Positions 691-63,989 of a stretch of DNA of 64,000 nt are shown one piece after another. Location: sequence record MK327931.1; one strand, given 5' to 3'. Under the pieces are notes generated by a model that saw only the letters and a list, made by a program, of their open reading frames with translations, did no database searches and was not told the origin of the DNA. Numbering within the stretch: position 1 is the first letter of the stretch; every line of letters starts with the position of its first letter. A program made the translations under genes and the position numbers.

Positions 691-1923
691 TTACTTATAC
701 CATTGCATTTCTCTGATATCAATGATAATTTTTGATGCTAATTTAATGTTTGGTTTTTTGGGAAGTACTGATTTCTTATATAGAACATCACGAATGTATT
801 GTACTTTATCATCGAAATATTCTAATACTTCTTCATACTTCCACTTACCATTACGAATATCCATCAACATTTGTGCATCAGGTCGTTTAACTTGAATAAT
901 TCCACTCTGTAAAGCTTCTTCTGCACTATTCAAAAGTCTAATTGTGTGCATAGCATGTTTACAATCGTATCCGTGTTGTGATTCTAAAACAGCACGTTTG
1001 GCATTACGATTTTCTTTCCATTTATGATAACTTTTCCTATTCTCACTATTCTCCTGATATTCTTTTTCGTTAAATTTTACAATTAGTTCTGGTTTGGTTT
1101 TCAACTCTTCAGTACTACGTTCTTTTGAAAAATAACGCAATGAACCATCATGGTTAATAGTGCTTTCATTAGGATTCTTAACAATCGCAAAAATGTTTTC
1201 TCCGTAATGAATTAGTTCATAACCATTATTAAAATTCAATAAATTGAAATCACGATCAAGAATTTTTTCAGTAGTGTAGTTATGCACTAATCTTACGAAA
1301 TGATATTGCTTTAATGGATTTTTCGAAACTAACTGCAATGATGTATCACGCATATATTTTTCAAAATCAATCTTTTTAGCATTAAATGGATGTAAGTTGG
1401 ATGTATCTAAACGTTCAACAAGATACTGTGGGAATGAATCATACATCCACGCAAGAACCTCATCGACAGGGTGTTCTTCTAAAATCTCATTTAATCGTTT
1501 TTCAGCAATACGCTCTTTATCCATCCAACCGTGATGATTTGTCATACGCTTAATCTGATTATATGCATATCCAGTGTATGAAAATGCAATCTTGGAACTA
1601 AGAAGTTTTTGGTTAAATGAACGAAGATAGTCATAAATTTCAGTACTTTCCACAATGTGTTCAGGTTCAACCCAAAGTGATTCAAGAATATTAGGGTTAG
1701 CTTCAGTGTATAATTTTAAATACTGATTCAACTCATAGAATTTAGTATCTTCTTCGCTTTTGTCAGCTACCTCTTTGACCTTATAGAAGGGTGTAAGAAT
1801 AAATTCTTTATTAGCAAGAAAAATACCACGATAATCAGTATCACTTTCCGGTGTACTGGTTCCGTAGGCTTGTGACCCAGCCAAGTGTTTCACTATTGTT
1901 TGTTCAATATATTGGTTATTCAT
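691..1923 (-). CDS. Pol-beta superfamily nucleotidyltransferase (RlaP/YcgL, T4 NrdC.11-like)
   Basis: GSQAYGTSTPESDTDYRGIF motif; NPNILESLW; C-terminal YDCKHAMHTIRLL. Confidence 0.85.
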   Translation of the reverse strand: MNNQYIEQTIVKHLAGSQAYGTSTPESDTDYRGIFLANKEFILTPFYKVKEVADKSEEDTKFYELNQYLKLYTEANPNILESLWVEPEHIVESTEIYDYLRSFNQKLLSSKIAFSYTGYAYNQIKRMTNHHGWMDKERIAEKRLNEILEEHPVDEVLAWMYDSFPQYLVERLDTSNLHPFNAKKIDFEKYMRDTSLQLVSKNPLKQYHFVRLVHNYTTEKILDRDFNLLNFNNGYELIHYGENIFAIVKNPNESTINHDGSLRYFSKERSTEELKTKPELIVKFNEKEYQENSENRKSYHKWKENRNAKRAVLESQHGYDCKHAMHTIRLLNSAEEALQSGIIQVKRPDAQMLMDIRNGKWKYEEVLEYFDDKVQYIRDVLYKKSVLPKKPNIKLASKIIIDIREMQWYK

Positions 1924-2321
1924 AGATAAATTGTTAACTCCTTTAAGAAACCATTATAATAACGATTAAAGTCATGTTCTAATGTTTTATAATCATCAAA
2001 ACTAAAACCTAAATTGATAATTGTATCTTCTTGAAAGAAAGTTTCTTCATTCATACATTCAATAGGTTCGTAATTAATTCCACCTTTGAAAACTTTTGTA
2101 AAAAACATTCCATCATTATTAATTTCAACATACATAAAATTATTTTCTGGGTCACGAGGACAGACGATATTCAGTGAACTATTTCCACTTGTATTGTACT
2201 CATAAGAAATTATATCAAAAGAATCAATACCATAACACTTAGATTTTTCTTTATCGCCAAATACTTTTCTATCTGTACTCATATTGCGTATAGTGCTATA
2301 GATATCATCAACTGTAGTCAT
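1920..2321 (-). CDS. Hypothetical protein, outlying member of the EExxFQxS/T family
   Basis: MNEETFFQEDTIINL. Confidence 0.6.
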   Translation of the reverse strand: MTTVDDIYSTIRNMSTDRKVFGDKEKSKCYGIDSFDIISYEYNTSGNSSLNIVCPRDPENNFMYVEINNDGMFFTKVFKGGINYEPIECMNEETFFQEDTIINLGFSFDDYKTLEHDFNRYYNGFLKELTIYL

Positions 2322-3357: not shown

Positions 3358-3924
3358 TTAGTATAAATCAGTAATGTCTTTGTATGCATTAATCTGTTTT
3401 TGTTGTAATGAAAGTTCATTGAGTTTAGTTACCATTTTATCTACACCAACACGTGTATAGAAAATAATAAATGAATCTAAATTGCCTAGAGTAATTCTTG
3501 AACTGAAATTTGAAAGTTTTCTTGCATAAACATAAATTTCTTCTTCACTTGGTAAACGTTTCTCAATCGGCCAGCTTTCCACACCATTCGGCTCATAATC
3601 GATTTCAAATTCAACTCCCATCACTGTGTCTTGAATGAGATCCGTATATGAACCACCGTAAAAATACTCTCTTGGTTTGGCTCTCCAACGAGGACTAAAT
3701 GGGTCAGATGCGTATTCTTTTACAAATTTGTAAAAGGACATTTTACTGAGCATATACTTCATCTCAATTAGTGCTTTGCGGTCATCATCAGTTTTAAACT
3801 CTGCTTTGAGCGATGGACTTTTACACAGTAACTTAACTAAATTGATGTACATCTTTAATGTACGTTGTTCTTTCATTTCTTTGATTTTGTGACGTTTTGG
3901 TGGCGGTAATAAAGATTTGACCAT
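3358..3924 (-). CDS. Hypothetical protein, tandem paralog 3 of 3
   Basis: CKSPSLKAEFKTDDDRKALIEMKYMLSK; RBS AGGAGG. Confidence 0.7.
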   Translation of the reverse strand: MVKSLLPPPKRHKIKEMKEQRTLKMYINLVKLLCKSPSLKAEFKTDDDRKALIEMKYMLSKMSFYKFVKEYASDPFSPRWRAKPREYFYGGSYTDLIQDTVMGVEFEIDYEPNGVESWPIEKRLPSEEEIYVYARKLSNFSSRITLGNLDSFIIFYTRVGVDKMVTKLNELSLQQKQINAYKDITDLY

Positions 3925-6721: not shown

Positions 6722-6737
6722 CTTTCTTTTCCTTAAT

Positions 6738-7325
6738 TTACCAACCAATTGTACCAGTTTCTGATGGTTTTCCAGTACTGACTGGGAATGAAGAACCTTT
6801 TTGTGTAACACTAGGTCTATATGTACTAAATCTGGATACTTTATTAATGTTTATATTTGTAATACCACTTGTACCAACGGTCAGTGTTCCAATAAACATT
6901 ATAATTTCAGATTCTTGTATTTGTGTTGGTGATATTTTATAAATTGGTTCACCGAGAACTAACGTTGCATATACATATTGTGTTTGTGTTCCAGATGAAA
7001 CAGTTGAAGCAAAAATAGAAACTGCTGGAAATTTATAAAGATAACCACCAATAAATGATGGTATCTGTCTATTAAATGTAAGACTATAGCCTGATGAAGT
7101 AATATTTAGACTAGCGTCATCATACAATTCTCCGTATTGTGTAAGTGGTAATCCATTGACAATAAAGTTAACTTCATCTTTGGTAATAGAGGGGAATGTA
7201 CATTCCCCATTTGAATTTGTTGGGTAATAAGTCATATTATTACCTAATACACCAAGTCCAGTACTTTTACCCTGTACTGTAACTTGTTGCATTGCCTTAA
7301 GGTCTGCTCTTATTTTAAATGCCAT
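6738..7325 (-). CDS. Short paralog of the flanking tail proteins (shared C-terminal domain)
   Basis: C-terminus ...YRPSVTQKGSSFPVSTGKPSETGTIGW matches both neighbours. Confidence 0.7.
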   Translation of the reverse strand: MAFKIRADLKAMQQVTVQGKSTGLGVLGNNMTYYPTNSNGECTFPSITKDEVNFIVNGLPLTQYGELYDDASLNITSSGYSLTFNRQIPSFIGGYLYKFPAVSIFASTVSSGTQTQYVYATLVLGEPIYKISPTQIQESEIIMFIGTLTVGTSGITNININKVSRFSTYRPSVTQKGSSFPVSTGKPSETGTIGW

Positions 7326-10067: not shown

Positions 10068-10075
10068 TATTTATA
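10068..10075 (-). promoter_or_regulatory. T4-type late promoter TATAAATA
   Basis: Exact T4 late consensus ~35 nt upstream of the tail-protein operon. Confidence 0.65.
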
Positions 10076-24351: not shown

Positions 24352-24975
24352 TTATTGTTTGACTGAACCGTAAAAAACCAGTTCTGGTTTTGTTAATATT
24401 ACAACATCTTCACCACGAGAACGACTAACTCTAAATAGAACTTCTGGTGGGATTCCATTTGCTGCATATAGTGAAAAAAGGAAACCTACCTTTGTTGCCA
24501 TTTCTTCGGTAAAAGTTGATAACTGTCTTACAGACACAAATGAATTATCACCATCAGTAACATTACTTTTAATCGAAATGTTATGAAGACCCAGTACTGA
24601 GCGATTTGTCATATATCGCTTTTCGGGAGATACACTAAAGAATACCACAGTACATGCTGAATTGCAATACCTAGAAACAATTAAATTTATCCCATTGTCT
24701 CTAACAAAGTTTGCCATTCGAATACCTGCATCAAAATCACCACCAGGAGATGTAATTGTGATGGTATCATAGTGTTCTTTATCATACAACTCTATCATAC
24801 GCTTGAGTGACCCATCTGTAATATCTGATATGAAATATACATTTCGGGTTTCAGGATTATACTTTATCACATTTTTACTTTCAATACCAGCACTGGCTGG
24901 AAAATTTATTAACAATAGAAACATTGCTGCTTGTATCACTTCAAGCCATAGTCTTTTCATATAACAAGTCCTCAA
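24352..24975 (-). CDS. Exported ClpP/crotonase-fold peptidase-like protein
   Basis: Signal-like N-terminus; ITSPGGD; CNSACT; LGLH. Confidence 0.7.
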   Translation of the reverse strand: MRTCYMKRLWLEVIQAAMFLLLINFPASAGIESKNVIKYNPETRNVYFISDITDGSLKRMIELYDKEHYDTITITSPGGDFDAGIRMANFVRDNGINLIVSRYCNSACTVVFFSVSPEKRYMTNRSVLGLHNISIKSNVTDGDNSFVSVRQLSTFTEEMATKVGFLFSLYAANGIPPEVLFRVSRSRGEDVVILTKPELVFYGSVKQ

Positions 24976-28239: not shown

Positions 28240-28935
28240 TTACACCCACTCTTCTACACCACCGCGACGCTTAACTAAGTACTTGCCTTCTTCGTTACGT
28301 GGACCAAGAATAATACCATCAATGAAACCATGTTCACCATATTCAAGTGCTTCTTCTGCATTTAACCACAAATCGCGGTCAGCATCTTTTAGTAATTGTT
28401 CATGTGATACACCTACAGCTTCTGCAATTTCTTTGGTCAACAATGTATTCAGTGCATCAGAATGTTGTAGGGAAATCTTCTGGTCTGTAATTAGACCTTG
28501 TGTACCAGAACTTACTTGGTGACACATGAAGTATGAGCGTTTACCACCTAAACGGAAACCTTTAGTCCCAATAACAGATTGTGTATAGCAACCCATTGAT
28601 GCTGCATAGCCCATTACTACAGTGCGAATTGGCGAAATACAAGACTTAGCAACATCTGCAATACCCAAACCTGCGTGTACTGAACCACCCGGTGAACTAA
28701 TGTAGAATGTAATAGGGGAATCACCTTGTGAGTCTAACCATACCAATTGTTGTTTGATGATATGTGCCATTTGATCATTGAAATCAGTATCAAGGAAAAT
28801 GATACGGTCTTGCATCATACGAGATGCTAGATCATATGTACGTTCTGAACCATTAACTTTCTCAACTACGTAAGGAATAGAAATGTTACGTACTTCGCCA
28901 TTAGCATAACCACCAAACATGAATTGTTCAACCAT
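28240..28935 (-). CDS. clpP: ATP-dependent Clp protease proteolytic subunit
   Basis: IPYVVEK, DRIIFL, YISSPGGSV, AASMG (Ser), MCHQ (His), DADRD (Asp). Confidence 0.95.
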   Translation of the reverse strand: MVEQFMFGGYANGEVRNISIPYVVEKVNGSERTYDLASRMMQDRIIFLDTDFNDQMAHIIKQQLVWLDSQGDSPITFYISSPGGSVHAGLGIADVAKSCISPIRTVVMGYAASMGCYTQSVIGTKGFRLGGKRSYFMCHQVSSGTQGLITDQKISLQHSDALNTLLTKEIAEAVGVSHEQLLKDADRDLWLNAEEALEYGEHGFIDGIILGPRNEEGKYLVKRRGGVEEWV

Positions 28936-41514: not shown

Positions 41515-41819
41515 TTTATTACCTCTATATCTACATCAGTTCCATAATATGATATTAATCCATCATCAGATTCACACTGAATAGACAACTCAGATTCATA
41601 GTATGTTACTTTATTCACTGTTAGTACTTGTTCTTCAATTACTCCAGAAAAATAATTCATCTCACGTACACGAACTTTAGTTCCTTTAGGTAGTTCATCT
41701 GAGATTTTTCGAACAAGATCATAAGCAGCCTGTTCAAGTGTGTACAGTAATTGTAATCTATCTTGAATATTCATATTATTTCCACCAACTGGTATCACGT
41801 CCATTAGACAAAGATTCAT
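41511..41819 (-). CDS. Small hypothetical protein (helix+beta family)
   Basis: ELPKGTKVRVRE. Confidence 0.55.
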   Translation of the reverse strand: MNLCLMDVIPVGGNNMNIQDRLQLLYTLEQAAYDLVRKISDELPKGTKVRVREMNYFSGVIEEQVLTVNKVTYYESELSIQCESDDGLISYYGTDVDIEVIK

Positions 41820-42465
41820 TGTACTGATGCCTAAAATTAGTTTTTGGATTATTGTTCATAGTACTAATAAAATCAAATTTAACATTCTCTTGAATATATT
41901 TTTTAACACTATCTTTAAATTTAATAGTACTGAAGTCTAAATCTAGATGTTCATACAATACCGGATGACAAAACTCATGTGTACGCAACGCTGGCATGGT
42001 ATCCTTAATGTATTGCACAGTGTTAATCATTGCATTGTATTCCGGCATAGCACGCATCATCATTAGCTGAAAGTGTTCTTCCTCTGACATTGACTCATCC
42101 AAATCAATAACGACTTCATCATTTTTAGAGTCATAAACTTTAATGGTACTCTTGGTTGGATCAAGCATAGCCCACTCTGGATACAGGCATGTTTTCCAAA
42201 AAGGATTATTGCACTGAAACATACTAATGAGATTTTGATCTTTATCAAAAATAGCAAATCCAAGATCCGAACTTGGTTGTACTTCACATACACAAATATC
42301 GTAAGACGAGTCTTCAGTACTGAGTGAACCAACTACATTTGATATATGTGAATATGGAGTTTCTCTTGACTCCAACTGAAATGTACTTTCAATTCGATTG
42401 ATTTGTGGATGTAATGTAATTACACCCCTTAGTACATATAAAATTCTATCTAAATCTTTAATCAA
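41776..42465 (-). CDS. EExxFQ family protein
   Basis: MSEEEHFQLMMMRAMP. Confidence 0.65.
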   Translation of the reverse strand: MIKDLDRILYVLRGVITLHPQINRIESTFQLESRETPYSHISNVVGSLSTEDSSYDICVCEVQPSSDLGFAIFDKDQNLISMFQCNNPFWKTCLYPEWAMLDPTKSTIKVYDSKNDEVVIDLDESMSEEEHFQLMMMRAMPEYNAMINTVQYIKDTMPALRTHEFCHPVLYEHLDLDFSTIKFKDSVKKYIQENVKFDFISTMNNNPKTNFRHQYNESLSNGRDTSWWK

Positions 42466-43040
42466 AATTCTATCCCCGTATCAGTTAATTTCGTTCCGTC
42501 CATGTACTTAACAGTTATTTCAATGCGTCGATCAGTACTCAATTTTTGAAGATCATTGTAGTACAATTTAAATTCTTCAAAGAACTCAAGTGGTGGAATA
42601 TCGTATAAAGTACTAATCTGGAAGTGCTCAGGTAATCCAAATTCCAATATATCAATCTTAGGCATAAGTCCATCGGCTGCTGCACCTTCTGGAGTACTGC
42701 TATCTGCTACATAAAACATAGAATTACCATGACGCTGGATAACGAATATGCAATCATCTTCACTTACATAAATCATATTTCCAAGGTATGGATCGTTATC
42801 ACACCAATTATCATGGACGAGTTGTTCAACTTGAAGTAAATCTTTTATAATTCCCTGACCACTATCGTCAACTAGAATATGTAAACCAGAACAATCTTTG
42901 CTCAACCAGCGGTATCTTGCATCACATCCTGATTCCATAAATGGATATTTTGAAAAATCCATATCAGTACCATTATAAAACCAATCGTACCACTCATTAC
43001 GCATACTAATCAGCTTAGTACTTAATTCTAATACATTCAT
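42462..43040 (-). CDS. EExxFQ family protein
   Basis: LPEHFQISTLYDIPP. Confidence 0.7.
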   Translation of the reverse strand: MNVLELSTKLISMRNEWYDWFYNGTDMDFSKYPFMESGCDARYRWLSKDCSGLHILVDDSGQGIIKDLLQVEQLVHDNWCDNDPYLGNMIYVSEDDCIFVIQRHGNSMFYVADSSTPEGAAADGLMPKIDILEFGLPEHFQISTLYDIPPLEFFEEFKLYYNDLQKLSTDRRIEITVKYMDGTKLTDTGIEF

Positions 43041-44911: not shown

Positions 44912-47057
44912 TCATAAAAATGTTACCTCATCAAATGAAAAGTTTAAGTACGTTGTTGAATCTTGGTCTAAAGTATGAATAGTAATATGACCATTGAAAT
45001 AAAAAGAAACATCAACTATTTGAAGTTTTGGGTATTTTCTAGTACTGAAATACCTTCCTACTACTAAGTCAGAAAACATATTTCTGTATTCTTGTGTTAC
45101 GTTTTTGTATAGGTTATGTAGAGCACTTTCTTGTGAATCGAAAGTAATGGAATAATCTTTCACCAATATAGCATATGTTTTCTGCATTAAAATGATATTC
45201 ATAAATCTCCTAATATCTCAAAAATTATTGATATTGGGTATACTGGGTTATCAGATGAAGTAACACATACTATTAGTACGTTTTTTCCAGGTGCTACATC
45301 CTTTACCGTGAAATTAATATTATTAAGAATCAGTGATTTACCAATATAATGCTCTTTCAATAATTCAACAAAATAATCCAGTACTGGATTATCTGCACTA
45401 TATGATAACTCAGTACTTGATATCATTTTATATGTATGAACTATTAGTTCAGCTTTAGTCATGAACACGCTCACAATTAAGGCAATAAATGCACTCAATG
45501 TCAGGTCGCCATGATTTATCAAAATCTTTGTGTTGTTCTTCGGTGTATTCCGCATCATCATTAATAGGGAAGAAATCACCAGCACCAGTCGCCCAGTCTG
45601 AATCTAAACGGAAACGAGCTAATTGAGTACTGTTACAATATGGACATTTATTCAAAATTTATTCCTTCTAACTGATATACGTTTAATGAAAATGACCCAC
45701 TATTATTATCGCATCTGAAACACAGTGTTAAAGAACCATTAAAACTAACTACATCCGTACAGATACATTTTTCACCATTGGATATGATAGATTTTCCTAT
45801 ATATAAATCTCTTACTATAGTACGGTAATGTTGCCATAAAAAATAATACACACTTTCATAGTACTCATCTTTTACATATGATAAGTATAAGAATTTATAA
45901 AATACTTGTATTTCCTTTAAGTTGTTTTTCATTCTTCAATTCCAGTAAATTTACACCAATCCAATCAACATCACTATCAGTACTTAATTCCAATCGTAGC
46001 TTACCGCTATGACTAACAATATCGCGGAATTTGTATATTTTATTATCACGAACTATACACAAATCATGGTAATATTCATGTAATTCATCCAAAAACTTTA
46101 TCCATACCGAACGATAGATTTCACTGTAGAGATATTCTCCAGCATCAACCGTAGCGTATTGGATATACAAAAATTTGTATGTGAATTGTATATCATTTAA
46201 TAACATATGTAACCTCTTATAAATTCACCAACTTCACAACTTTAATCTCGATAAATCCCCTATCGGTTATTTCCTGAAATTGAACATGGATTATACCATT
46301 ATATGATTGCACACCATAGAAATCGAATTTATCATTTCCATCGATAAAAGTACTGTAATTCTTTTTTATATATTCACCTACTGAATCTAAGTACTCAATA
46401 TATAAATCAATAAATGGTTGTTCTTTGGATCGGTTATGTGAACCTATGTTGTTACTAACAAGGTATACATCATACAAATCATATAGGATCTTATAAGTGA
46501 ATTGTATATCATTTAAATTTAATCCCAAGGGAATATCTCCAACGGAATACTGGTAAATCCAAAATCAGTGTAGTACTGAACCTCAACTTTACCATCACGT
46601 CTAATGATTATATCAGAAAATTCTGCATGGTCATCACCAATAATAACAGTACTGAATTTTTTTTTAATCTTACCACGAATCGTATGAATCATTTCAGTGC
46701 ATGTGTCTTCTAGACTAGGGCTATCATTGTCGTGTGCTAAATCTCGAATAATCTTGTATGTTAGTAGGAAATCTTTATAATTCATATGTCCACCAAATCT
46801 ATACTATATCTTTCATTAGTATTACTATCTATAAATGATAGTACTAATTTACCACCAAAACTATTAACTTGTTCTATCTTCTGTTTTTTACCACGAATGA
46901 TTATCTCACTATTAACAAAATATTCACGTATCATTATTAAGTGATTAATCCAGATAGTATGAGTGAATGTGTTTTCTCGTATTGTATTGAGATATCTTCC
47001 ATTGTGATGTAAATCAAACAAAACACTGTATGTATATTGTAGAACTTTATAATTCAT
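44912..47057 (-). other. Tandem array of 'Q/LxTYK' small paralogs: 44912..45202, 45199..45462, 45648..45932, 45895..46206, 46217..46528, 46519..46785, 46782..47057; plus Zn-finger ORF 45455..45655
   Basis: LNDIQFTYKFLY / LNDIQFTYKILY / KEIQVFYKFLY / YKDFLLTYKII / YKVLQYTYSVL; CPYC...CLNC. Confidence 0.7.
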
Positions 47058-54127: not shown

Positions 54128-55980
54128 TTAAGTCACTGCATTATACTTCTCTATAGCATTAGTAATATTTAATATAGCTTCAGGAACCATTTCTTTATTG
54201 TATTCACGTTTTAAATTTTCCATTTTCTTAATAATTTCCAAGAAAAATGGCAAAATACATGAAGTATCTGTAAAATTACATGAGTACAAAGTACTCATTT
54301 GAAATAATTCACCTGAATCAATATTAAGAGATTTGTATTCCTTAACAATGTTTTCGTTTGTATTGAAAATATGAAATACTGTTCCCATGTGATGAAGATA
54401 TACACCATTCTCATTTTGAATATGGCATGGTGTGATTACAATAGCAGTGTTGTCAATATTATTTACTATTGATAAACGTAGACTATGTAAACCTAAAATA
54501 ACAGTACAATCACTTGAACTGCTTTGAATTTGGTCAGCAGTTTGTGTAACACTTGTAATATTTTCCCCATCAAGACAACTCTTGATTTTATCAAATGAAT
54601 TTTTCATTGATTTAGTTAGATACATTTATGAACACCTTCGAAATATTTGATTAATGATTTTATCATATCGCTACTAATGCCATGTAAGTCAACACCTAAA
54701 CACTCGTATTGAAAAAAATCAATATCCTCCAGTGTGTTTAGATCAATTTCCACCTTATCATGACCCAACGAATTCATAATAACGTTTTTATCATTAATTG
54801 TCAAGAAAGTTTTTTTATCTGAACCTAAAAAGATTTTTACATGTTTTTTTGGCATTACATCATAAGATAAAGATTGTGAACCATAAATGTATATGCCTTC
54901 CATTGAACCAATATCTATAAAATATAGACGAATCCCTTTGTGGTATTTTGACTCCTTAGTGATCGCCTCTATTAGTTCATCTGTGGTTGTTAACCTTGTT
55001 TCTTTCTTCTCTAAATTGCTCAAATGCATAAAATAATACCTTGATCATTTGTAATGTTTCTGACATTACATCAGCAGAAAATTGAACATCAGTGTATTTT
55101 ACCATAGTACTTTGAGTAAAGAAAGTAGCTTCAATATCTTCAAGGTCAAATGGTTCATCAAATAAATTAGTACTGAACATATCAGTTTTTTTCTTATAAG
55201 TCAACATAAACTTAGCACTGTATCTCAATACAATTTCATCTTTACTTACTAAAATTCGTGCAATGTTCTGTCTACCCAGTGTTGTAATGTTAACATTAAA
55301 CGTATTCTTTCGTGCCTCAACAATATCAACGAAATAACCATCACCTTGGTAAACGTTATGACGAACTTCTAATCCTTGTTGAACTGTATTGAACAGTGCG
55401 TCCTGGATAAAATAATTTGCAGTATCGATGTTTCCTAAAATATCTAACATAACTTCTCCTTTATAGCTGTCATATTTAGAAGAAATTCAGTAAGCAATTC
55501 CTCCGTAACATGCTCTGTATACCAGAATATCACAATATCTTTTGAAAGTCGTGTATTCATAAAAATATCTACTAACTCTTTGTAGAACTCTAGTGTTTCG
55601 AGATTTGTGAGAATTAACGAGTACTGAAAGAGTAATTCTTCCGTTAGATTAAATTCTGGATAAAGTAAATCATTGAACTCATGTGATGCAGTTTGAACTT
55701 TAATTTCTTTGAAGTTATTGGTTATACAACCGGAATAAATATTTCGGTGCAACTCTCTGTACAACGCAGCATAATCTATGAATTTTGCTTTAGGGTTAAA
55801 ATCAAGAACACTTTCACCTTTATATGACAATCGGTGGAACGCCGAGAACATAGTCACTTCCCACGGTTGCTTAATATCTAGCTCAGTAATATCAATATTA
55901 TTGGACAGAAGAACCGTAAAAATCTCACCAATCTTTAATAGTAACTTAGTACGTGCCAGTGCTACCATCGGGTCAGTCAT
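54128..55980 (-). other. EExxFQ family CDS x4 (54128..54625, 54616..55029, 54977..55450, 55444..55980)
   Basis: GELFQMSTL / DIDFFQYECL / EATFFTQSTM / EELLFQYSLI. Confidence 0.7.
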
Positions 55981-56393
55981 TATACACCTTCATATTCATC
56001 AAGAAAATCTTCGATAATCATTTCAGCTTCATCCATATGCATAGCATCAACTTCAATGATGCGAACTTTAGATGCATCCCAAATCATAAAGCTAGGAACA
56101 TTATCAGGCTCGTAGTCATTTTTGTACTGAACAGCATCATAACCTTGAGCAGTGCAATTCTCAATAAGTGAACGCCACTCATCATCACTGCCTAAATCTT
56201 CACACAGAAGCACGTTATCAACATCAACTTCTAAGGTATGCAAGTATACTGTACATGCGTCTACTACGTTCAGTGGGCTTCTCAGCTTGCGTAATGCAGC
56301 TTCCAAAGCACTGTGTTTACCTCCCATATGAAGACCACCATACGGGATATAAAAGTTATCAATTTTTACAGTACTCGCATGATACAGTTTCAT
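55980..56393 (-). CDS. Possible ADP-ribosyltransferase-fold protein (ART-PolyVal-like)
   Basis: KLYHAS ... GGLHMG ... QGYDAVQYKNDYE ... SFMIWDASKVRI. Confidence 0.5.
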   Translation of the reverse strand: MKLYHASTVKIDNFYIPYGGLHMGGKHSALEAALRKLRSPLNVVDACTVYLHTLEVDVDNVLLCEDLGSDDEWRSLIENCTAQGYDAVQYKNDYEPDNVPSFMIWDASKVRIIEVDAMHMDEAEMIIEDFLDEYEGV

Positions 56394-58145
56394 ATTTCAT
56401 TCCTATTTCAGTACTTTAGTCAATGCTTTCACAGCGGTTTCGAGTTGAGCATAGTCGTTAATTGTAAGGTAATGAATACCATGTGCCTTCATTTCAGCAT
56501 CTATTTTACTATATAAATCAAACATGTCAAGGATATGATTGTATGCATATGAAGTATTTGAAACACACAATTCTTGGAACAAACGTTCTTCCAAGTCATT
56601 CACAACTTCTCCATGAATGTCAAGTACTACACCATCTTTGTAAGTGTAGTACTCTTCACTCCACTCTTCAGAAAGTCGGAACAGTAACGGATTCCCGCCG
56701 AACACTTCCATGTCATAGGAATTTATCTCACTAAGTAGTGTTTCACCTGGTTCTGGTGTGAAGTCAAAATATGCGAGTGTTGTACCATCATAGTCCTTGA
56801 GTGATATACCAGTATGATTTAAGGTTACTTCACCATAATTATTATTCTTGAACTTGATTTTGATATTAATCTCAATGTATTTTATTGTCTCATCATCACT
56901 GAAATTGTAATCAACTTTATACTTTTTCCAAAGAAGTTTGATATCTTTGAAGTACTTTAATTTACTTTCAATTTCTTTAAAGTCCATCTGGAACCACCAT
57001 TTCTTGAATGTGCTTACATTTTATATTTGCCATATTGGTATGTAATATAATGCTGTGTTTACGCAATGATTTTACTTTGTAGCACTCATTGAGTACTGAA
57101 ATAATTCCCCATAACTCTTCTACACTAATAGTGATAGGTTCACTTGTACTCAGTTGCATCAGTGCTGCTTGAACATCATCTTTGTTATTAATAGTGAACT
57201 GGATTCCTCTTTTGAGAATTTTAGTTTTTGGATTGTACTCAGCTAATACATCACCTTCTGGATAACCCTCATGAAGTAATAATGTTGTTTCAAAATCACC
57301 GCAGTTGAAGTTAATTTCATCATAATCAGGTACACAAATGTTCCCTTCCCCGTACTCATTAGGTTCAGATTCTAGTGTTAAAATACGCTGAGTCTCATTG
57401 CTCAGGATGATAGAATCATTCCAGTACTGGGTAGTGAATGCTCTACGTTTCTTTTGAAAGCACATACTCGACATTGAACCATACTTCTTGTATATGGACT
57501 TCTTGAACTCAATAGCAGCAGGAGCCACCTTGATAACTTCACGAATTAAGTCAATAGCTTCTTGATAACTTTTTCTCATTTATCGTATCCATATAAAATA
57601 TGATCTAGTGTACTTTGTACTTCTTCATGAAAGAATGAAGGGTAAACTTGTATCAATTTATCTTTAAGTTCAAGGGAATGGCATAGTTCTAATGTTTTGT
57701 AACAATCCTCGTACTGTGCCAGATCATGTAATGTACTTAACTGAAAATGTTGTTCTTCGGAGTACAATAAATCATAAACCATATTATCGGATAAAAGATT
57801 AGATTTGATTGAAGGATCAAGTACTGTCTGGTGGTGACCAACCCAAAAGATAGCTTTTGAGTTAATGTTATTACAACCCCATCCTTTCCCCATCTTTTGG
57901 TGAATAGCAAATACACAGGAATCATACAAATTAATGCTCAGACGTTCTTCGTCTGCATGGATAGTTACACCATCAATAGATAGTGTATATTTGAAATCCA
58001 TAGCCCCCTCACTTCGTGCACGAGAACTAAAGACCAGATATCGATGAATTATGGTATTGATTTTATCTGTCCATCCATCAACACATTTGGATGCACATAA
58101 TGTAAAAAGATCATGATTGTAGTTCATAAAATTCTCCTTTAGGAC

Positions 58146-58174
58146 AATGTATCATACAAAAATACCAGAGTCAA
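58146..58174 (-). promoter_or_regulatory. Sigma70-type promoter TTGACT-17-TACATT
   Basis: Exact spacing, TGn extension; -35 in the terminator loop. Confidence 0.7.
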
Positions 58175-58183
58175 CCCCTGGTA
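58158..58183 (-). terminator. Intrinsic terminator
   Basis: ACCAGGG/CTCTGGT plus ATTTTT. Confidence 0.65.
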
Positions 58184-61100
58184 CGAATTTAATCCATCAT
58201 AAGTGGGATAATTGCCCATATCTTTTTCATAATCATATCTTCAGTAAAAACAAATGTTTTAGGAGCAGTATATGATATTGACACACCAAATGGAAGTTTG
58301 ATTGCATCATCAATTATATTATGAATATCAAACCATGTTTTAACATAATCATACGGTGGAAGTTCATGAATTGTACTTAACTGAAAGTAATTCTCTTCAC
58401 CAAAATCACTATATTCAATTTCACAAATTTTAGTGAATTGATGATTCCATTTAGATATAATACTATTTTTATTATTGTACATAGTAGTTCTATGCATAAA
58501 ACCATTTTTGCTAGTATGATTTGATATTACGTTTTCTTCAATGTCAGTATCTATTTTAAAATTCATATCAAAGTTGTAGTACGGACTTGACGATTCTTTG
58601 AATTTTAAATGTAAATTGCGATTGTTATTAATTTCAATTTCAATACAAAACACATCTGAATCAAAACGATTAAACTTGTAATCGTTATCTTCCGGTAGAT
58701 TCTGTATTTTTTTCATAATACTAAGCATAGGGTGTACTACACTTTTAATAAAATCATTTGTTATTTTCATAGTATTCCTTTAGAACTTTATATGATTCAA
58801 CAATACTATCTTGTGTATAATTTGAACTATATACAACAGCACTTGTTTTAGTTGACCATAGATATGACATAAAGGTTATAACACTACTACATGGACTTAA
58901 TGTATTGTTTTGAAATTCAATTTCTTCAATGTTATCAGTACTGGTATAGATGAATTGGAAAGTACCCATTGATTTATTGGACAGCGATACTATAGTAGAA
59001 TCCGTACCAGGACTATACATGAATGTCTCATTACTAATTGAACTATCATTAGTATATGATGGTTTGGGAATATAAATCAAACGCATGATATCGCGTTCAA
59101 GACCTGACTTATTACTTTCCACCAAAGAAATCATATCTATATTTGATATATGTTCAACACTGACATGGAACTTTTTGTCGAGAATCACATCTCCATGAGA
59201 ATTTTTATATGAAGACAAAATCTCATACATCTCAACTAATTCGCGTGCATTTAATAAACTCATGTTTTGTCTCTTAATGAAAGAATATCCTTAGTATAAA
59301 CTGAAACAGAAATATGATTATATTTCATCATTAATTTATACACATAAGAAGCTAGTACTAAATCGTAAATTAATTTAGTATTATACAGTACTTGGTATTG
59401 TAACGCAAGTGAATCAATATCATCTTTACTTTCAATATCCAGAAATGTACCGAAAAATGTAGTACCGTAGAGATGAAAAGTGGAATTAATGCAATCAATG
59501 CATTCATTGTCCAATAGAGTAGATGCTGATGCCCTCGGTGAATCCCAAATAGTCACTGCGTGTATGCCCTCAACGAACAAATCTATCCATATTTTGTGTC
59601 GTTGTCTTTTTTTTGTTTTATAATTTTCTGGATTTGAAAGTGTAGTTTCAATTATATCCCATATGTACAAACAATCATCTCTTGTCATTATATAACCTTA
59701 TCCATTGCTGCATTTAATGCTTTTAAACGATCTACATTCAAATTATTGAAGATGTACGTTCCTAACATGTGGAAATCGAACTGGTTCTTTTTGTATTCAT
59801 GATAAATTAAACTACAAAAAATAATAGTACTAAGAACCTCTTCAGGTATAACAGTGCTCATCTGGAACAGTTCTTCTTCAACTGTACTTGAATCTGGATT
59901 GATAGATTTTAACACATACTCTTCATCACCGAATAGTACTTTAATATTATATAAAACACCAACAGTACTAATATGGAATGGGTGGTGTGAAAAACTTCCA
60001 TCATCCTTAATTTGTATATCGGTTCTAATCTCACACTCTTCATTACTTTTACTTTTATTTTTTACAATACAAATATTTCTGGCCCCAGAAATAGTAAGAA
60101 TACCGTGGTCGTAATATTCATTTGACCAACATTTGGATGAAATTGATACATCACGGATGAGATATTGTTTTTCAATTTCTTTCGCACTACCAACAATTGA
60201 TAGCATTTTTTTACTGATATCATATAATAACTGATGGCGTTCTGTCATATAACTATAAGCGTTCATATTTTTCCTTAACAGATTCTATATTTTGAAGTAG
60301 TGTATTCAGAACATCAGTCTTGCAATTGATAAAATCATTGTACATAACTAGTTCACCACAATCAAGAATTTTTGCAGTATCGTAACAAAGCATTAAGTAC
60401 TCGAATTCTTTGTAATTGTCCAACAAGGATTTCTGGAAAATGAATGCATCTCGAATATCTTCACTTTGGTCTAATTCTGGTGGAACATCCAACCCAATAA
60501 ATCCATCATCTTCACTGAAATTAGATTCTACAATTTTATTCATTTTTTCATGTAATGCATTCGCAAATACCATATTAGAAGAAATAGAACCAATACGTTC
60601 ACGATTTCTGGATGTGCGAATGTACATAGTAATCGTATCCCATGAACTTTTAATTTTTTTAGAAAATTCATAAGTTTTATATACATCCAACTGAACTGAT
60701 CCAAAACGATGTTTGGATTTGTTTTCAATTTTCAGTCGATAATCATCAAATTCAACAATTTCTGTAATGTCATGAATCTCTGAAAGTTCTGCAATGTCAT
60801 GCATGAGTCTCAAAATTTTAGTTCTGATATGGTTCATTGTGCATCCTCGAATTTAACAGGTACATGTTCATTAATGAAATTCTTAAGAGCCTGTACTAAA
60901 TCCTCTAATTCTTTTGTACTGTATTTTAAAATAGTTTTAAAGTGAATCAAATCTTTTCTTTCCATGATCTTTGGAATTTTATATGCTAACTCTAAACAGC
61001 GTACAGTACTGGCATCATACAAAAGGTTTGCGTTGAACATTAGAACATTGTATTCATCAGATGAAATTTTATAATTATATGTATCAATCACTTCATGTGT

Positions 61101-61427
61101 GTATAAATTCTTATACACAATTTTATTCTCACTGAAGTTTGAGCAAACACACAGATGATCGTTGTAAAATGAAGAACGATAATCTTGTTTACGTTGTACA
61201 TCTGCTATGATTTGTAATACTGTATATTTTTCTTCAGAATCCAACTCAATGTTTGCATAACTGCTCGCAGTTTCAGATACAAGGATATTGATGTTATATT
61301 TCTCATTAACTTTAATGTACTGGCGTGAGCCAGTATCAGGAATGAACTTAAAACAATGCTTCAGAAGTAATGTGACTTCTTTAATTAATTCAGTACTCAT
61401 AGATTCCTCCAACTCTAGTTAAAATCA

Positions 61428-61456
61428 AGTATAACACACCTGAATGCTCTTGTAAA
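61428..61456 (-). promoter_or_regulatory. T4-early-like promoter TTTACA-17-TATACT
   Basis: Exact spacing with TGTG extension. Confidence 0.7.
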
Positions 61457-61467
61457 GCCATAAACAC

Positions 61468-61489
61468 AAAAAGACCCATACGGGTCTTT
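61468..61489 (-). terminator. Intrinsic terminator
   Basis: AAAGACCC/GGGTCTTT plus U tract. Confidence 0.8.
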
Positions 61490-63989
61490 ATTTTGGTAAA
61501 ACACTGTCGATGTACGCTAGAACCTCATCTCGAAGGTACGTTCCATCTATAGTTAGGTAATAGTTCATGGGAATATCACTCCCAACCTTCTCATAAATTT
61601 TCATACATGATATCACATCTTCATCACAAATGGTACTCAATTGAAAAATAACTTCATCGGTTAACGGTACGATATCATGTTTAGATAGGGGATTTGTATT
61701 TTCATTCAACACAATATTAATCAAGTTAGGAGTATTCTTTGACGAAATATAACGATGCTTACTACGAATTACCATTCTCGATAGTGAAATACTGGAACTC
61801 CATCTTGGATCAACATCTTCATATGATAACGATATTAACATCTCGTGAAAATCTTGAAATTTCATTGACGCATAATATGTTTTATCCTCACCGTACATAC
61901 CAAATGATTTAAATTCAATATCCCCCACTTTGTATGTATCGACATCATTATTTGAGAACTTTATTAAACTATTAATTAGTCTAATTAGAATATCATCTTT
62001 ATCCATTCTTAAATAACTCCAAGTGCATGTCGTATAAATCTCTGAAGTCTTCATAGAAATCTTTTTCTTCGAGAATATTCTTTAAACTGGGAATCTCTTC
62101 CATAATTTCATCTATATCTGATTCTATGAAAAATCCTGATGGATTATCGTAGTTTTGTAACAGATAACTGAAAGTAATAATGTAAAGAAGTTCATTAGGA
62201 TTGTGAATTAAACTTAGCTGGAACATAGCTGATTCTAAATCTGATTCAGTACTAAGATCAACCCAACGTGAATTTCTATAATCAATTCGTACTTGACTTG
62301 TATTTGGATTCCATGTGAAGCAATGTGTACCAATATGACCTATACAACCAACCCTTGTACTGTCTCCGGTATCAACACTGATATCAACAAATAGTTCAAT
62401 ACCGATATCGGTTGATGTTACACGACCTTTTTTCAGAAATAAATCATTATCCTTACGAAATTGTTTGGATGAAAGAGTGTCAATGATGCACATCAATGTT
62501 TTTGCAAATGCAACACAATGACGAAATTCAAGCCTATGAAATTGGTAATCATTGATATTCATAATTCAACCCTCAATATTTTATCAGCAATAGATATAAC
62601 CTTATCATTGAATACATTACCAATCTCAATCCTTATATACATAGCAGGTGGAATCTTTCCTTGTAGTGAATAATATGTTTGTATACCTAAGTACTCATTA
62701 TCTGATAATGAAAATTTGATTCTCTCCATATCAATGTCTGTTACTGGTAAATCTATCATTTCATAATGGTAGTCAACGTTTTCATTGTATATTTTATCGA
62801 AGTAATTTGAATAATCACTACTAATGTAGATGCTATCATCACGAATAATTACTTTATAATCAGAAGGTTCAAATTTATCTTTACAGGAAAAGAATGCATC
62901 ATCTATTTTCTCTTCTCTTATGCCAAATAACATTCTACCATCATATTTTACATCAAGAATACTACCTAGTATATTAATGGTACAATGCTCATCAATATTA
63001 TGATGTAATGAACGTTTTTTGTATTTTGGGTTAATGAAAATTTTCATTAATTTTATACAAATTTCAGTAATGCATTTTACATTCTCATTTTCTATGTACA
63101 TTAAAAGCCCTCTTTAATTCTTTTACATTTTTAATGAATACTTTCATTGCAGAAATCTCAAAAGATAATGTATTAAATTTGCAGTACTTTTTAAAGTACG
63201 ACATAATATATAACATTTTGAGTTCTTTTTCTGTATAAATTAAACTGTTTTGAAAGTAACTTTCTTCGGAAATGTCCGTAAGAAAAGAATAAAATGTATT
63301 TTGCTTGTGCACAATTTTAATACTATCAGACCAAGATTTGTATGAAACGTAATCAGTACGTGCAAAATCATATAGTGAATTAGATGTATCTGTGTATGTT
63401 TCCGAGAACACAATCTTATATATCTTATCTTGAATTCGAGAACATATGTACCTATGGTCATCTGTCTCACTGATTGCAATGTATCTATGGAGTAAATCTT
63501 TATGAGCATTGATGAACTCAAACACTTCTAAACACTCCCTAGCGAACTTCATAGTTTCTCTGTACTTTCGGTTCATTAGTCTCTCCAAACTTTACCAGGG
63601 AAGTGTTTCTCGTAGTACTCATCATCACTTAACATATAATCAGGAGTTTCTACTTCTATGGTTTTGAAGATTGTTTCTGGAATGTGTGTGACTTTATTGG
63701 GTTGTACTTTATGTTCGCGTAAAACCTTCTGTATCGCTCCTAGACGTTGTAAATCGATACATGTAGGAAAGACTAAGCTGTACTGAAATAACTCATCAGG
63801 GGTCATTATAGACACATCTTTAGCTTGTTTGATTTGATAATTAGTACTAATGAATATATCAAATCCTTGTACAGCATTATAGCTTACATAGGTTGTTTTA
63901 TTTTTGTCAATAGGAGCACTTAAACGATATCCATATATCCCGTGTTGGTCAACAACACAACGTTGCATAATTTTAATCATTTCTAACAT
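61488..63989 (-). other. EExxFQ family CDS (61488..62054, 61999..62562, 63085..63588, 63576..63989) and similar-sized 62559..63101
   Basis: DEVIFQLSTI / ESAMFQLSLI / EESYFQNSLI / PDELFQYSLV. Confidence 0.7.

What the first reader, a model, noticed from the sequence alone, without database searches (positions are those of the whole stretch)
54128..63989. Tandem expansion of a ~20-member protein family sharing an E-E-x-x-F-Q-x-S-[TL] helix
Seen: ~17 consecutive 140-200-aa ORFs, plus outliers at 1920, 41776 and 42462, have divergent N-terminal two-thirds. They share a motif near the C-terminal third: EEQHFQLSTLHDL, EENYFQLSTIHEL, EEELFQMSTVIP, DEVIFQLSTICD, ESAMFQLSLIHN, EESYFQNSLIY, PDELFQYSLVF, EELLFQYSLIL, GELFQMSTLY, PEHFQISTLYDI. 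Early-type promoters subdivide the array. Inference: a modular arsenal with variable target-binding domains and a constant docking helix for a shared partner, for example adaptors for the phage ClpP, anti-defence proteins, or virion-packaged ejected proteins.
Basis: partly seen in the sequence, partly recalled or inferred. Interest (0 to 1): 0.7.

Follow-up and report, generated by a model that had tools for sequence, protein, structure and literature searches.

The report
Giant hidden gene family in jumbo phage
A jumbo E. coli phage devotes roughly a tenth of its genes to about 60 very divergent copies of one small protein of unknown fold, all keeping the same short motif, and these are probably early-made proteins that act on the host rather than parts of the virus particle.

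Summary
The window is Escherichia phage vB_EcoM_G17 (Asteriusvirus, RaK2-like jumbo myovirus).

- **Motif:** FQxS[TL] occurs in 10 of the 19 array ORFs, against 0.04 expected in shuffles.
- **Family:** a profile separates 47 members (E ≤ 3e-9) from everything else (next best 0.004).
- **Extent:** the window cuts the array. It runs about 19 kb further, a second cluster lies elsewhere, and the genome holds about 60 copies. RaK2 has at least 27, collinear with G17, so the expansion predates the split of these genera.
- **Fold:** two AlphaFold models give one compact α/β domain, with the motif at a helix–turn–helix corner. No solved structure or Pfam family matches. Only uncharacterised proteins of RaK2-like phages match.
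- **Properties:** members are acidic and lack predicted membrane-spanning segments. dN/dS is about 0.24. They diverge faster than their neighbours.
- **Expression:** near-consensus σ70 promoters sit in the few intergenic gaps. No member appears in two virion proteomes.

"Virion-packaged" is contradicted. "Docking helix for ClpP" is unsupported, and the motif reads better as a structural keystone. Best reading: an old, diversified set of early host-binding or counter-defence proteins. Function is inferred, not shown.

The parts
63576..63989 (-). family member, 137 aa, motif PDELFQYSLVF
   Evidence: HMM E 6.8e-16; leave-one-out E 4.6e-8
63085..63588 (-). family member, 167 aa (G17 annotates its start at 63576); motif SEESYFQNSLIYT at 63232-63270; folded
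   Evidence: HMM E 4.5e-24; phrog_12674 E 1.9e-7 over nearly full length; AlphaFold model pLDDT 79, pTM 0.74; motif translation
62559..63101 (-). degenerate family member, 180 aa, motif decayed (RIKFSLSDNEY)
   Evidence: The G17 copy misses the HMM (E 2.8). Its positional orthologue in phage A4 has DETLFQYSLIHN and HMM E 1.4e-9. dN/dS 0.23
61999..62562 (-). family member, 187 aa, motif ESAMFQLSLIHN
   Evidence: HMM E 1.9e-18
61488..62054 (-). family member, 188 aa (annotated start 62006), motif DEVIFQLSTICD
   Evidence: HMM E 1.4e-19; leave-one-out E 1.6e-10
61413..61487 (-). intergenic terminator hairpin (61470-61489) followed by a sigma70-type promoter, TTTACA-17-TGtTATACT
   Evidence: terminator also annotated in the G17 record
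60834..61412 (-). possible degenerate member, 192 aa, no clear motif
   Evidence: HMM E 0.0037 and 4e-4 for the 121Q copy. hhalign places it on the motif region, but no better than negative controls
60253..60837 (-). family member, 194 aa, motif DAFIFQKSLLDN
   Evidence: HMM E 4.3e-14
59688..60266 (-). family member, 192 aa, motif EEELFQMSTVIP
   Evidence: HMM E 6.8e-21
59260..59688 (-). degenerate family member, 142 aa, motif decayed (SLALQYQVLY)
   Evidence: The A4 positional orthologue has EATIFQLSTLYS and HMM E 6.5e-11
58754..59263 (-). family member, 169 aa, motif EEIEFQNNTLS
   Evidence: HMM E 4.2e-11
58189..58770 (-). family member, 193 aa, motif EENYFQLSTIHE
   Evidence: HMM E 1.2e-20
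58128..58188 (-). intergenic terminator hairpin (58162-58184) overlapping a sigma70-type promoter, TTGACT-17-TGaTACATT
   Evidence: terminator annotated in G17
57576..58127 (-). family member, 183 aa, motif EEQHFQLSTLHD
   Evidence: HMM E 1.5e-18
56977..57579 (-). possible degenerate member, 200 aa (AALMQLSTSEP)
   Evidence: HMM E 0.047. The A4 orthologue keeps FQ, but its HMM E is 2.2. Not settled
56403..56987 (-). degenerate family member, 194 aa (EERLFQELCV)
   Evidence: The A4 orthologue has EEMAFQSSTVND and HMM E 1.7e-4; hhalign P 0.004 on the motif region
55980..56393 (-). not a family member: conserved 137-aa protein, probably an ART-PolyVal / AcrIF11-like ADP-ribosyltransferase, embedded in the array
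   Evidence: 90.5% identical in phage A4 and 60% in RaK2, at the same array position. It is the only part of the array conserved at DNA level across genera, and two GenBank records annotate it as a putative ADP-ribosyl transferase. Atlas features give PF18760 0.90 and PF26151 0.88. Not confirmed by PDB sequence search
55444..55980 (-). family member, 178 aa, motif EELLFQYSLIL; unusually conserved (80% in A4)
   Evidence: HMM E 1.9e-12; identity; a RaK2 family member sits in the same place after the ART-like gene
54977..55450 (-). not a detectable member, 157 aa, conserved
   Evidence: HMM E 1.2; 41% identical to the RaK2 positional orthologue; dN/dS 0.04
54616..55029 (-). family member, 137 aa, variant motif DIDFFQYECLG
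   Evidence: HMM E 9.9e-10
54128..54625 (-). family member, 165 aa, motif GELFQMSTLY; last gene of the array
   Evidence: HMM E 8.6e-11
42462..43040 (-). outlying family member, 192 aa, motif PEHFQISTLYD
   Evidence: HMM E 1.9e-14
41776..42465 (-). outlying family member, 229 aa, motif EEEHFQLMMMR
   Evidence: Not a seed, yet HMM E 2.6e-16
1920..2321 (-). outlying family member, 133 aa, motif EETFFQEDTII
   Evidence: Not a seed, yet HMM E 1.5e-15; leave-one-out E 5e-6

Best explanation
The array is part of an old, lineage-restricted multigene family of RaK2-like jumbo phages, with about 60 copies in this genome.

**The protein.** Each gene encodes one small (about 100-230 aa), acidic protein without predicted membrane-spanning segments, so probably cytoplasmic. 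It folds as a single alpha/beta domain: a long N-terminal helix, an antiparallel sheet of six or seven strands with variable loops, then a short helix, a turn, a helix, a strand and a last helix.

**The motif.** The motif [ST]-E-E-x-aromatic-F-Q-x-S-[TL]-[VIL]-aromatic-[DN] forms the short helix and the turn into the next helix. It most likely acts as the structural keystone of the fold, the part that cannot change while the rest diversifies. It is probably not a separable docking module.

**Expression and role.** The genes are transcribed by the host RNA polymerase from strong sigma70-type promoters, so early, and are not packed into virions. Most likely each paralogue binds and blocks or redirects a different host protein or defence protein, through its variable sheet and loops. 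This would be a host-takeover and counter-defence arsenal built on one scaffold.

**Shown:** family, extent, fold model, age, purifying selection, promoters, absence from virions. **Inferred:** early timing, cytoplasmic location, the structural role of the motif, and the binding function.
For: - **Family is real.** Motif statistics. HMM gap and recovery of non-seed members. Leave-one-out 40 of 47.
- **Extent.** 58 six-frame matches in G17. Continuation beyond the window. Second cluster.
- **Lineage-restricted.** 22 hits among 1.84 billion representative proteins, all but one of them matching a window member by BLASTP and so orthologues or close kin in related phages. tblastn finds only Asteriusvirus. 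The profile finds 33 matches in RaK2, 8 in GAP32, 4 in CBB and 0 in PA5oct. No Pfam family on any homologue.
- **Single shared fold.** Two models with the same architecture. BFVD hits are only uncharacterised proteins of RaK2-like phages, TM up to 0.68 over full length.
- **Old and retained.** Gene order is collinear between G17 and RaK2, with members at 20-40% identity beside neighbours at 41-64%. The closest paralogue pair is 56% identical, and only 53 of 1081 pairs are BLASTP-significant.
- **Functional genes.** dN/dS median 0.24, none above 0.6.
- **Faster turnover than neighbours.** Median reciprocal-best-hit identity to phage A4 is 39% against 69%, and 12 of 46 members have no reciprocal hit. 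Per-gene dS ranges 0.08-2.2, which points to cassette exchange.
- **Early and non-virion.** Six strict sigma70 promoters with TGn on the coding strand in 34 kb (shuffle mean 1.7), four or five of them inside the 1.9 kb of intergenic DNA. TATAAATA is absent from the array. No member in the phAPEC6 or RaK2 virion proteomes.
- **Acidic, no membrane segments.** Median pI 4.96, net charge -9, only one of 47 members with a strongly hydrophobic 19-residue stretch.
- **Context.** An AcrIF11/ART-PolyVal-like gene sits inside the array. The same window holds the RNA ligase and polynucleotide kinase tRNA-repair pair, an N6-adenine methyltransferase, and Sir2-like and NUDIX genes.
- **Motif is structural.** It lies in the highest-confidence segment of both models (pLDDT 96-98).
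Against: - No member has any experimental or homology-based function. The binding role rests on analogy and context.
- Gene-wide dN/dS (0.24) is only slightly above that of neighbouring small genes (0.19). No positive selection is shown, so an arms race is not demonstrated.
- Early expression is inferred from promoter sequence only. The metatranscriptome contigs could be DNA carry-over.
- I had no model coordinates, so burial of F and Q was not measured. An absolutely invariant Q (47 of 47) is unusual for a purely structural residue and would also fit a shared contact or ligand site.
- Some copies have lost the motif yet stay intact and constrained. That is awkward for a strict 'keystone' reading.
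- The sheet region of the models has low confidence (pLDDT 42-58).
Confidence: 0.45

Rival explanations
1. The proteins are modular adaptors: a variable N-terminal part binds different targets, and the constant E-E-x-x-F-Q-x-S-[TL] element docks all of them onto one shared partner, either a phage protein such as ClpP or a host hub.
For: - F and Q are invariant in 47 of 47 members while the rest drops to 10-20% identity.
- The sequence signal is concentrated in the motif.
- The motif is kept across phages of E. coli, Klebsiella, Cronobacter and Pectobacterium, with matching folds in phages of Serratia, Yersinia and Erwinia. This would fit a conserved partner.
- A phage ClpP lies in the window.
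- Q-x-S-[LT]-[VIL]-[FYW] loosely recalls the bacterial clamp-binding motif QL[SD]LF (my own knowledge, untested).
Against: - The models show one compact domain, with the motif inside a confidently folded helix-turn-helix corner and not on a free peptide.
- No resemblance to ClpS, SspB or any other solved adaptor.
- Known Clp adaptors bind the unfoldase, not ClpP (established knowledge).
- Some members lost the motif and remain under constraint.
- No binding evidence of any kind.
Confidence: 0.17
2. The proteins are packed into the capsid and ejected with the DNA, like the T4 internal proteins.
For: They are small, numerous and variable, as internal proteins are. phAPEC6 has a capsid inner body (PMC7247149).
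Against: - None of gp404c-gp422c is among the 62 phAPEC6 virion proteins. The list jumps from gp347 to gp549.
- No RaK2 virion protein lies between gp275 and gp493, while the RaK2 array is ORF362-440.
- Promoters are sigma70-type, and the T4-type late motif is absent from the array.
- There is no conserved N-terminal targeting sequence. The conserved element lies 50-70 residues from the C-terminus.
Confidence: 0.03
3. The array is largely evolutionary ballast: old duplicates that drift under weak constraint, with little present function.
For: - Extreme divergence, and motif decay in some copies.
- Presence and absence differ between close relatives.
- No known function.
Against: - All copies are intact, tightly packed ORFs.
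- dN/dS is 0.08-0.56, median 0.24.
- Order and membership are kept between genera.
- The genes have dedicated strong promoters and terminators.
- About a tenth of a genome that must fit a capsid of fixed size is a real cost.
Confidence: 0.1
4. The domain is an enzyme or small-ligand binder, and the invariant Q with the acidic pair forms the active or binding site. The copies would differ in substrate.
For: Q and F are invariant, and E-E is common just before them.
Against: - The acidic residues are not invariant (E in 32 and 30 of 47).
- No other conserved polar residue exists.
- No fold match to any enzyme.
- Sixty-fold expansion at 10-20% identity is unusual for an enzyme.
Confidence: 0.05

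Closest known systems
Multigene families of large DNA viruses (African swine fever virus MGF110/360/505, poxvirus Bcl-2-like and ankyrin/PRANC families; the zinc-ribbon expansion of about 35 copies in Bacillus phage G, PMC7824862)
   Same: Tandem arrays of many very divergent paralogues of one small domain in a large viral genome. Copy number varies between relatives. In the animal viruses they are expressed early and used against host defences (established knowledge).
   Different: There is no sequence or fold relationship. The host is a bacterium and the function here is unknown. Copy number (about 60, roughly a tenth of the genes) is higher than the roughly 35 zinc-ribbon copies of phage G, the only other phage expansion I found a count for.
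Poly-immunity loci of SUKH / Imm-type immunity proteins (Zhang, Iyer and Aravind 2011; recalled from memory)
   Same: Tandem arrays of small, divergent alpha+beta proteins that each neutralise a different toxin. Relatives have been recruited by DNA viruses. An ADP-ribosyltransferase-like gene sits inside this array.
   Different: No SUKH or other immunity fold was found. The best PDB Z-scores are 3.9 and 2.6, and no NCBIfam or Pfam family matches. The motif is unrelated.
T4 internal proteins (IPI-III) and the hypervariable internal-protein locus of T-even phages
   Same: A variable set of small proteins in T4-related phages that share one short conserved element. At least one, IPI*, is an anti-defence protein (established knowledge).
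   Different: In the internal proteins the shared element is an N-terminal capsid-targeting peptide and the proteins are in the virion. Here the motif is internal and the proteins are absent from two virion proteomes.
PHROG families phrog_12674 and phrog_9317 (unknown function)
   Same: Five window members hit phrog_12674, best E 1.9e-7 over nearly full length. One also hits phrog_9317.
   Different: These are unannotated clusters. Each window member has its own separate PHROG, so the unity of the family is not recorded there.
p32 / C1QBP (MAM33 family)
   Same: The order of elements (N-terminal helix, antiparallel sheet, C-terminal helices) and strong acidity. Three chains of this family appear among the weak Foldseek rows for the second model.
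   Different: Superposition is poor (TM 0.11-0.15, E about 2-3.5) and there is no VIA-align match. I do not count it as a match.

Membership tests
FQxS family itself (this report; partly phrog_12674) | Profile match that includes the invariant F-Q of the motif, 40-75 residues from the C-terminus | tested here: met
   15 window ORFs at HMM E <= 1e-9. Leave-one-out keeps 40 of 47. Three more window ORFs qualify through their A4 orthologues.
FQxS family itself | Shared full-length fold | tested here: met
   Two AlphaFold models have the same order of elements. BFVD models of paralogues and of RaK2 and GAP32 proteins align over 156-188 columns, TM up to 0.68. All of these are predictions, not solved structures.
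Clp protease adaptors (ClpS, SspB type) | Homology or fold similarity to a known adaptor | tested here: not met
   No adaptor appears among PDB matches. Foldseek E > 0.5, and the best VIA-align Z-scores are 3.9 and 2.6. PDB profile search was empty.
Clp protease adaptors | Physical binding to ClpP or to its unfoldase | not tested
Virion-packaged internal or ejected proteins | Presence in purified virions | tested here: not met
   Absent from the phAPEC6 list (62 proteins; the array is gp404c-422c) and from the RaK2 list (54 proteins; the array is ORF362-440). Mass spectrometry can miss low-copy proteins.
Virion-packaged internal or ejected proteins | Late promoter and an N-terminal targeting or cleavage signal | tested here: not met
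   No TATAAATA in the array. Promoters are sigma70-type. N-termini are not conserved.
SUKH / immunity-protein superfamilies | SUKH or other Imm fold, or a family HMM match | tested here: not met
   No NCBIfam hit, no Pfam family on homologues, and no fold match.
SUKH / immunity-protein superfamilies | Tandem arrays of divergent small proteins next to toxin-type genes | tested here: met
   Array organisation. An ART-like gene lies inside it. This is a resemblance in layout only.
DNA-mimic anti-restriction proteins (Ocr, ArdA) | Strong acidity together with the Ocr or ArdA fold | tested here: not met
   Acidic (median pI 4.96), but no fold match.
Bacterial sliding-clamp binding motif (QL[SD]LF) | Motif in an exposed, flexible peptide that binds the beta clamp | tested here: inconclusive
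   Q-x-S-[LT]-[VIL]-[FYW] is loosely similar. However, position 4 is T in 19 of 47 members, the invariant F precedes the Q, and the segment is confidently folded. Binding was not tested.
ART-PolyVal / AcrIF11 ADP-ribosyltransferases (only for ORF 55980-56393) | Family profile match and catalytic H-Y-E-type residues | tested here: inconclusive
   Language-model features give 0.90 to PF18760 clusters and 0.88 to PF26151. Two GenBank records annotate it this way. H5, Y90 and E95 are conserved. There is no PDB sequence match and no fold was made.

The most novel reading that the evidence does not exclude
RaK2-like jumbo phages carry a repertoire of about 60 binders built on one new fold, in the way an immune system builds on one scaffold. 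Each paralogue would neutralise a different bacterial defence or host factor. That would make it the largest single-family counter-defence arsenal known in a phage, and a source of dozens of new inhibitors. A bolder variant is that the invariant F-Q-x-S-[TL] corner also plugs all of them into one common hub.
Probability: 0.25. Interest if true: 0.85.

Novelty: new variant of a known kind. Interest (0 to 1): 0.62.

Why it matters
About a tenth of the genes of a widespread group of therapeutic-candidate jumbo phages (121Q, PBECO4, phAPEC6, RaK2, K64-1 and relatives) turn out to be one family. Until now each was listed as a separate 'hypothetical protein'.

The family has no Pfam entry, no solved relative and a predicted fold without a match. 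It has nevertheless been kept in order since before the E. coli and Klebsiella phage genera split.

If the members are host-binding or counter-defence proteins, they would help explain why these genomes are so large. They would also give a ready-made panel of about 60 natural variants of one scaffold for finding new inhibitors of bacterial proteins and defence systems.

Even if the function proves otherwise, the profile lets annotators collapse dozens of orphan genes per genome into one family.

Tried and rejected
- **BLASTP all-against-all in the window** found almost nothing within the array: one 19-residue match at E 0.003. Profiles were needed.
- **PDB searches with the family profile** found only chance hits. 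Foldseek, VIA-align and ESM-Atlas searches with both models gave no credible match.
- **Protein-atlas feature search** gave no usable hit for two members.
- **NCBIfam** gave nothing above its cut-offs.
With a single protein it returned one locus, 121Q.
- **The whole genome** was not available as G000.
- **Complex prediction** on the ART-like protein (55980) with the adjacent member (55444) returned 'no answer' (score 0.00). This is neither for nor against binding. ClpP was not tested, because only one job was allowed.
- **Wastewater metatranscriptome contigs** cover parts of the array but cannot separate RNA from DNA.
- **hhalign of single degenerate members** against the family profile did not beat the negative controls. 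Their membership rests on A4 orthologues instead.
- **The generic promoter scan** over the array was not above chance (59 found, 67.5 expected). Only the strict scan with an extended -10 and the intergenic location is informative.
- **PDB profile search for ORF 55980** gave only RecA repeat artefacts.
- **Literature searches** found no description of this family. The RaK2 paper only notes that about 10% of its products are paralogues.
- **A winged-helix reading** of the C-terminal helices (GntR rows at Z 2.1-2.6) was rejected as too weak and at odds with the acidity.

Full report
**Where the window lies.** The array matches Escherichia phage vB_EcoM_G17 (MK327931.1, Asteriusvirus, 370.8 kb) at 100% identity. 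The window corresponds to record positions 260881-324880 on the same strand. G17 belongs to the RaK2-like jumbo myoviruses (121Q, PBECO4, phAPEC6, RaK2, GAP32). Nearly all genes are on the minus strand. Every gene of 54128..63989 (G17_00517-00535) is annotated 'hypothetical protein'.

- FQxS[TL] occurs in 10 of these 19 proteins and in 1 of the other 95 window ORFs. In 2000 shuffles of the array proteins the mean was 0.04 and the maximum 1.
- The motif lies 52-74 residues from the C-terminus in every case.
- An HMM built from motif-bearing ORFs of the window and of the adjoining G17 sequence recovers non-seed proteins strongly.
- The HMM leaves a clean gap: 47 members at E <= 3.4e-9, the next protein at 0.0037.
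- In leave-one-out tests 40 of 47 are still recognised. With the motif masked only 6 are, and the N-terminal part alone finds 8.

**The family is much larger than reported.** The window ends inside the array.

- In the G17 record the same kind of ORF continues for about 19 kb, to window-equivalent 82826. About 30 further members carry a sharper motif, for example PWDSEEYYFQNSTVYD.
- A six-frame profile search of the whole G17 genome gives 58 matches.
- A second cluster at record 80-97 kb holds at least ten more ORFs with the canonical motif.
- Three motif-less window ORFs (56403, 59260, 62559) have positional orthologues in the related phage A4 that carry the canonical motif and hit the HMM (E 1.7e-4, 6.5e-11, 1.4e-9). 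They are decayed members.
- ORFs 56977 and 60834 are possible members. ORFs 54977 and 55980 are not.

In all, about 60 genes belong to one family, roughly a tenth of the genome. This agrees with the unexplained remark in the RaK2 paper that nearly 10% of its products are paralogues (PMC3622015).

**Distribution and age.**

- A profile search of 1.84 billion representative proteins returned only 22 hits. All but one match a window member by BLASTP, so they are orthologues or close kin of window members in related phages.
- tblastn finds only Asteriusvirus.
- The profile finds 33 matches in RaK2, 8 in GAP32, 4 in CBB and none in PA5oct.
- No homologue carries a Pfam family.
- In RaK2 at least 27 ORFs of 244-277 kb hit the HMM.
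- The end of the RaK2 array is collinear with G17. Orthologues of 56977, 55980, 55444, 54977, 54616, 54128 and 53612 follow in the same order. Family members are at 20-40% identity and the non-family genes at 41-64%.
- Within G17 the closest paralogue pair is 56% identical, and only 53 of 1081 pairs are BLASTP-significant.

The expansion therefore predates the split of the E. coli and Klebsiella phage genera, and the copies have been kept individually since.

**Structure.**

- The AlphaFold model of 63085-63588 has pLDDT 79 and pTM 0.74. The model of the 121Q orthologue of a near-consensus member has pLDDT 84 and pTM 0.81.
- Both give the same compact architecture: a long N-terminal helix, six or seven antiparallel strands with a low-confidence loop, a short helix that ends in ...EExxFQ, a four- or five-residue turn (S-[TL]-[VIL]-aromatic), a longer helix, a strand and a final helix.
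- The motif lies in the most confident part (pLDDT 96-98).
- Its positions read as local structural signals: an S/T N-cap followed by E-E at the start of the short helix, hydrophobic residues in the turn, and D/N as N-cap of the next helix. This is inference, because I had no coordinates to measure burial.
- No solved structure matches. Foldseek gives E > 0.5, and VIA-align against 48,161 chains gives best Z 3.9 and 2.6. ESM-Atlas models reach TM 0.37 at most.
- BFVD returns only uncharacterised proteins of 121Q, SP27, UB, RaK2, GAP32, Serratia phage BF, Yersinia fHe-Yen9 phages and Erwinia pEa_SNUABM phages. These align over their full length at TM up to 0.68 and 13-20% identity.

The 'divergent N-terminal two-thirds' is thus the same fold in all members, not a set of unrelated domains.

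**Properties and evolution.**

- Members are acidic (median pI 4.96, net charge -9), and only one of the 47 has a strongly hydrophobic 19-residue stretch that could span a membrane.
- Against phage ph0011 (about 83% DNA identity) their dN/dS is 0.08-0.56, median 0.24, against 0.19 for neighbouring genes. They are real, constrained genes, and no gene-wide positive selection is shown.
- Against the more distant Asteriusvirus A4 the family has a median reciprocal-best-hit identity of 39%, and 12 of 46 members lack a reciprocal hit. The neighbours are at 69%.
- Per-gene dS varies from 0.08 to 2.2. This indicates that individual cassettes have been exchanged by recombination.

**Expression and location.**

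- The array is almost gap-free.
- In 34 kb a strict scan (-35 with at most one mismatch, 16-18 spacer, TGn extended -10) finds six promoters on the coding strand and one on the other. The shuffle mean is 1.7.
- Four or five of the six lie in the 1.9 kb that is intergenic. Two are in the window, each just after a terminator hairpin, with -10 elements ending at 58146 and 61428.
- The T4-type late motif TATAAATA is depleted in the window (2 found, 13.8 expected) and absent from the array.
- None of the array products (gp404c-gp422c) is among the 62 virion proteins of phAPEC6 (PMC7247149). No RaK2 virion protein lies between gp275 and gp493, while its array is ORF362-440.
- Short contigs from four wastewater metatranscriptomes cover parts of the array but cannot be told from DNA carry-over.

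I infer early transcription by host RNA polymerase and a cytoplasmic, non-structural role.

**Context.**

- Inside the array, ORF 55980-56393 is not a member. It is 90.5% identical in A4 and 60% in RaK2 at the same position.
- It is the only part of the array whose DNA is conserved across genera, and two GenBank records annotate it as a putative ADP-ribosyl transferase.
- Language-model features place it near ART-PolyVal (0.90) and AcrIF11-type (0.88) ADP-ribosyltransferases.
- PDB sequence searches did not confirm this.
- The family member just downstream (55444) is unusually conserved (80% in A4). A complex prediction for this pair gave no answer.
- The rest of the window carries known counter-defence or host-manipulation genes: the RNA ligase and polynucleotide kinase pair, an N6-adenine methyltransferase, and Sir2-like and NUDIX genes.

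**Interpretation.** The best-supported reading is an old, lineage-restricted multigene family of early, acidic, single-domain proteins.

- The invariant motif is probably the structural keystone of a fold with no detectable relatives.
- The variable sheet and loops have probably diversified to bind different host or defence proteins.
- The 'separable docking helix' and the ClpP link have no support, though a shared contact at the invariant F-Q is not excluded.
- The 'virion-packaged' option is contradicted by two proteomes and by the promoters.
- Pure ballast is unlikely, given the constraint, the conserved order and the dedicated regulatory signals.

**Comparison with known systems.** In layout and evolutionary behaviour the array works like the multigene families of large animal DNA viruses and like bacterial poly-immunity loci. 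By sequence and predicted fold it belongs to none of them. I found no paper that describes it.

Noticed in passing
beyond the window's end: L002 14000-33000 (G17 record about 324.9-343.7 kb): The array continues for about 19 kb, with about 30 more members carrying a sharper motif ([ST]EE.[YF]FQ.S[TL][VI][YHFW][DN]). A sub-cluster of five tandem copies at window-equivalent 70033-72354 holds the closest paralogue pair (56% identity).
   Followed up: yes
L012 (G17 record 78001-98000): A second, looser cluster of at least ten family members with the canonical motif lies about 220 kb from the main array (HMM E 7e-9 to 1e-5), interspersed with unrelated small ORFs.
   Followed up: partly
window 55980-56393 (-): A conserved 137-aa gene embedded in the array is probably an ART-PolyVal / AcrIF11-like ADP-ribosyltransferase. 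It is the only piece of the array conserved at DNA level from E. coli to Klebsiella, Erwinia, Serratia and Cronobacter phages. A family member follows it directly in both G17 and RaK2.
   Followed up: partly
whole window: The T4-type late promoter word TATAAATA is strongly avoided (2 found, 13.8 expected; all 100 shuffles had more). One of the two copies (10068-10075, minus strand) sits just upstream of the large gene 7337-10033. This suggests the word is a working late promoter in this phage.
   Followed up: no
window 3992-6811, 6738-7325, 7337-10033 (-): Two large genes (939 and 898 aa) are paralogues (27% identity over 956 columns, E 1.6e-59). The short ORF between them matches the C-terminal ends of both.
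   Followed up: no
window 45648-47057 (-): Another small tandem family: five adjacent ORFs of 88-103 aa with weak chained similarity (E 6e-6 to 2e-4). They also diverge fast between G17, ph0011 and A4.
   Followed up: no
window 24352-24975 and 28240-28935 (-): A second, very divergent ClpP-like ORF (29% identity over 100 residues, E 0.006) lies 3.3 kb from the annotated phage ClpP. The stretch between them contains masked N runs, which I left alone.
   Followed up: no
window 54128-63989 compared with L011 (phage ph0011): Synonymous divergence differs more than 20-fold between adjacent array genes (dS 0.08 for 59260, 1.36 for 60253). This is a sign that single gene cassettes are swapped by recombination among Asteriusvirus phages.
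   Followed up: partly
motif of all members, e.g. window 63232-63270 (-): Q-x-S-[LT]-[VIL]-[FYW] loosely resembles the bacterial beta-clamp binding motif QL[SD]LF. The RaK2 paper reports no detectable gp45 clamp homologue (PMC3622015). This is probably coincidence, because the segment is confidently folded, but I did not test it.
   Followed up: no
window 2324-2833, 2830-3351, 3358-3924 (-): Three adjacent ORFs of 169-188 aa next to family member 1920-2321 are paralogues of each other (E 9e-14 and 0.01) but do not hit the family profile.
   Followed up: no
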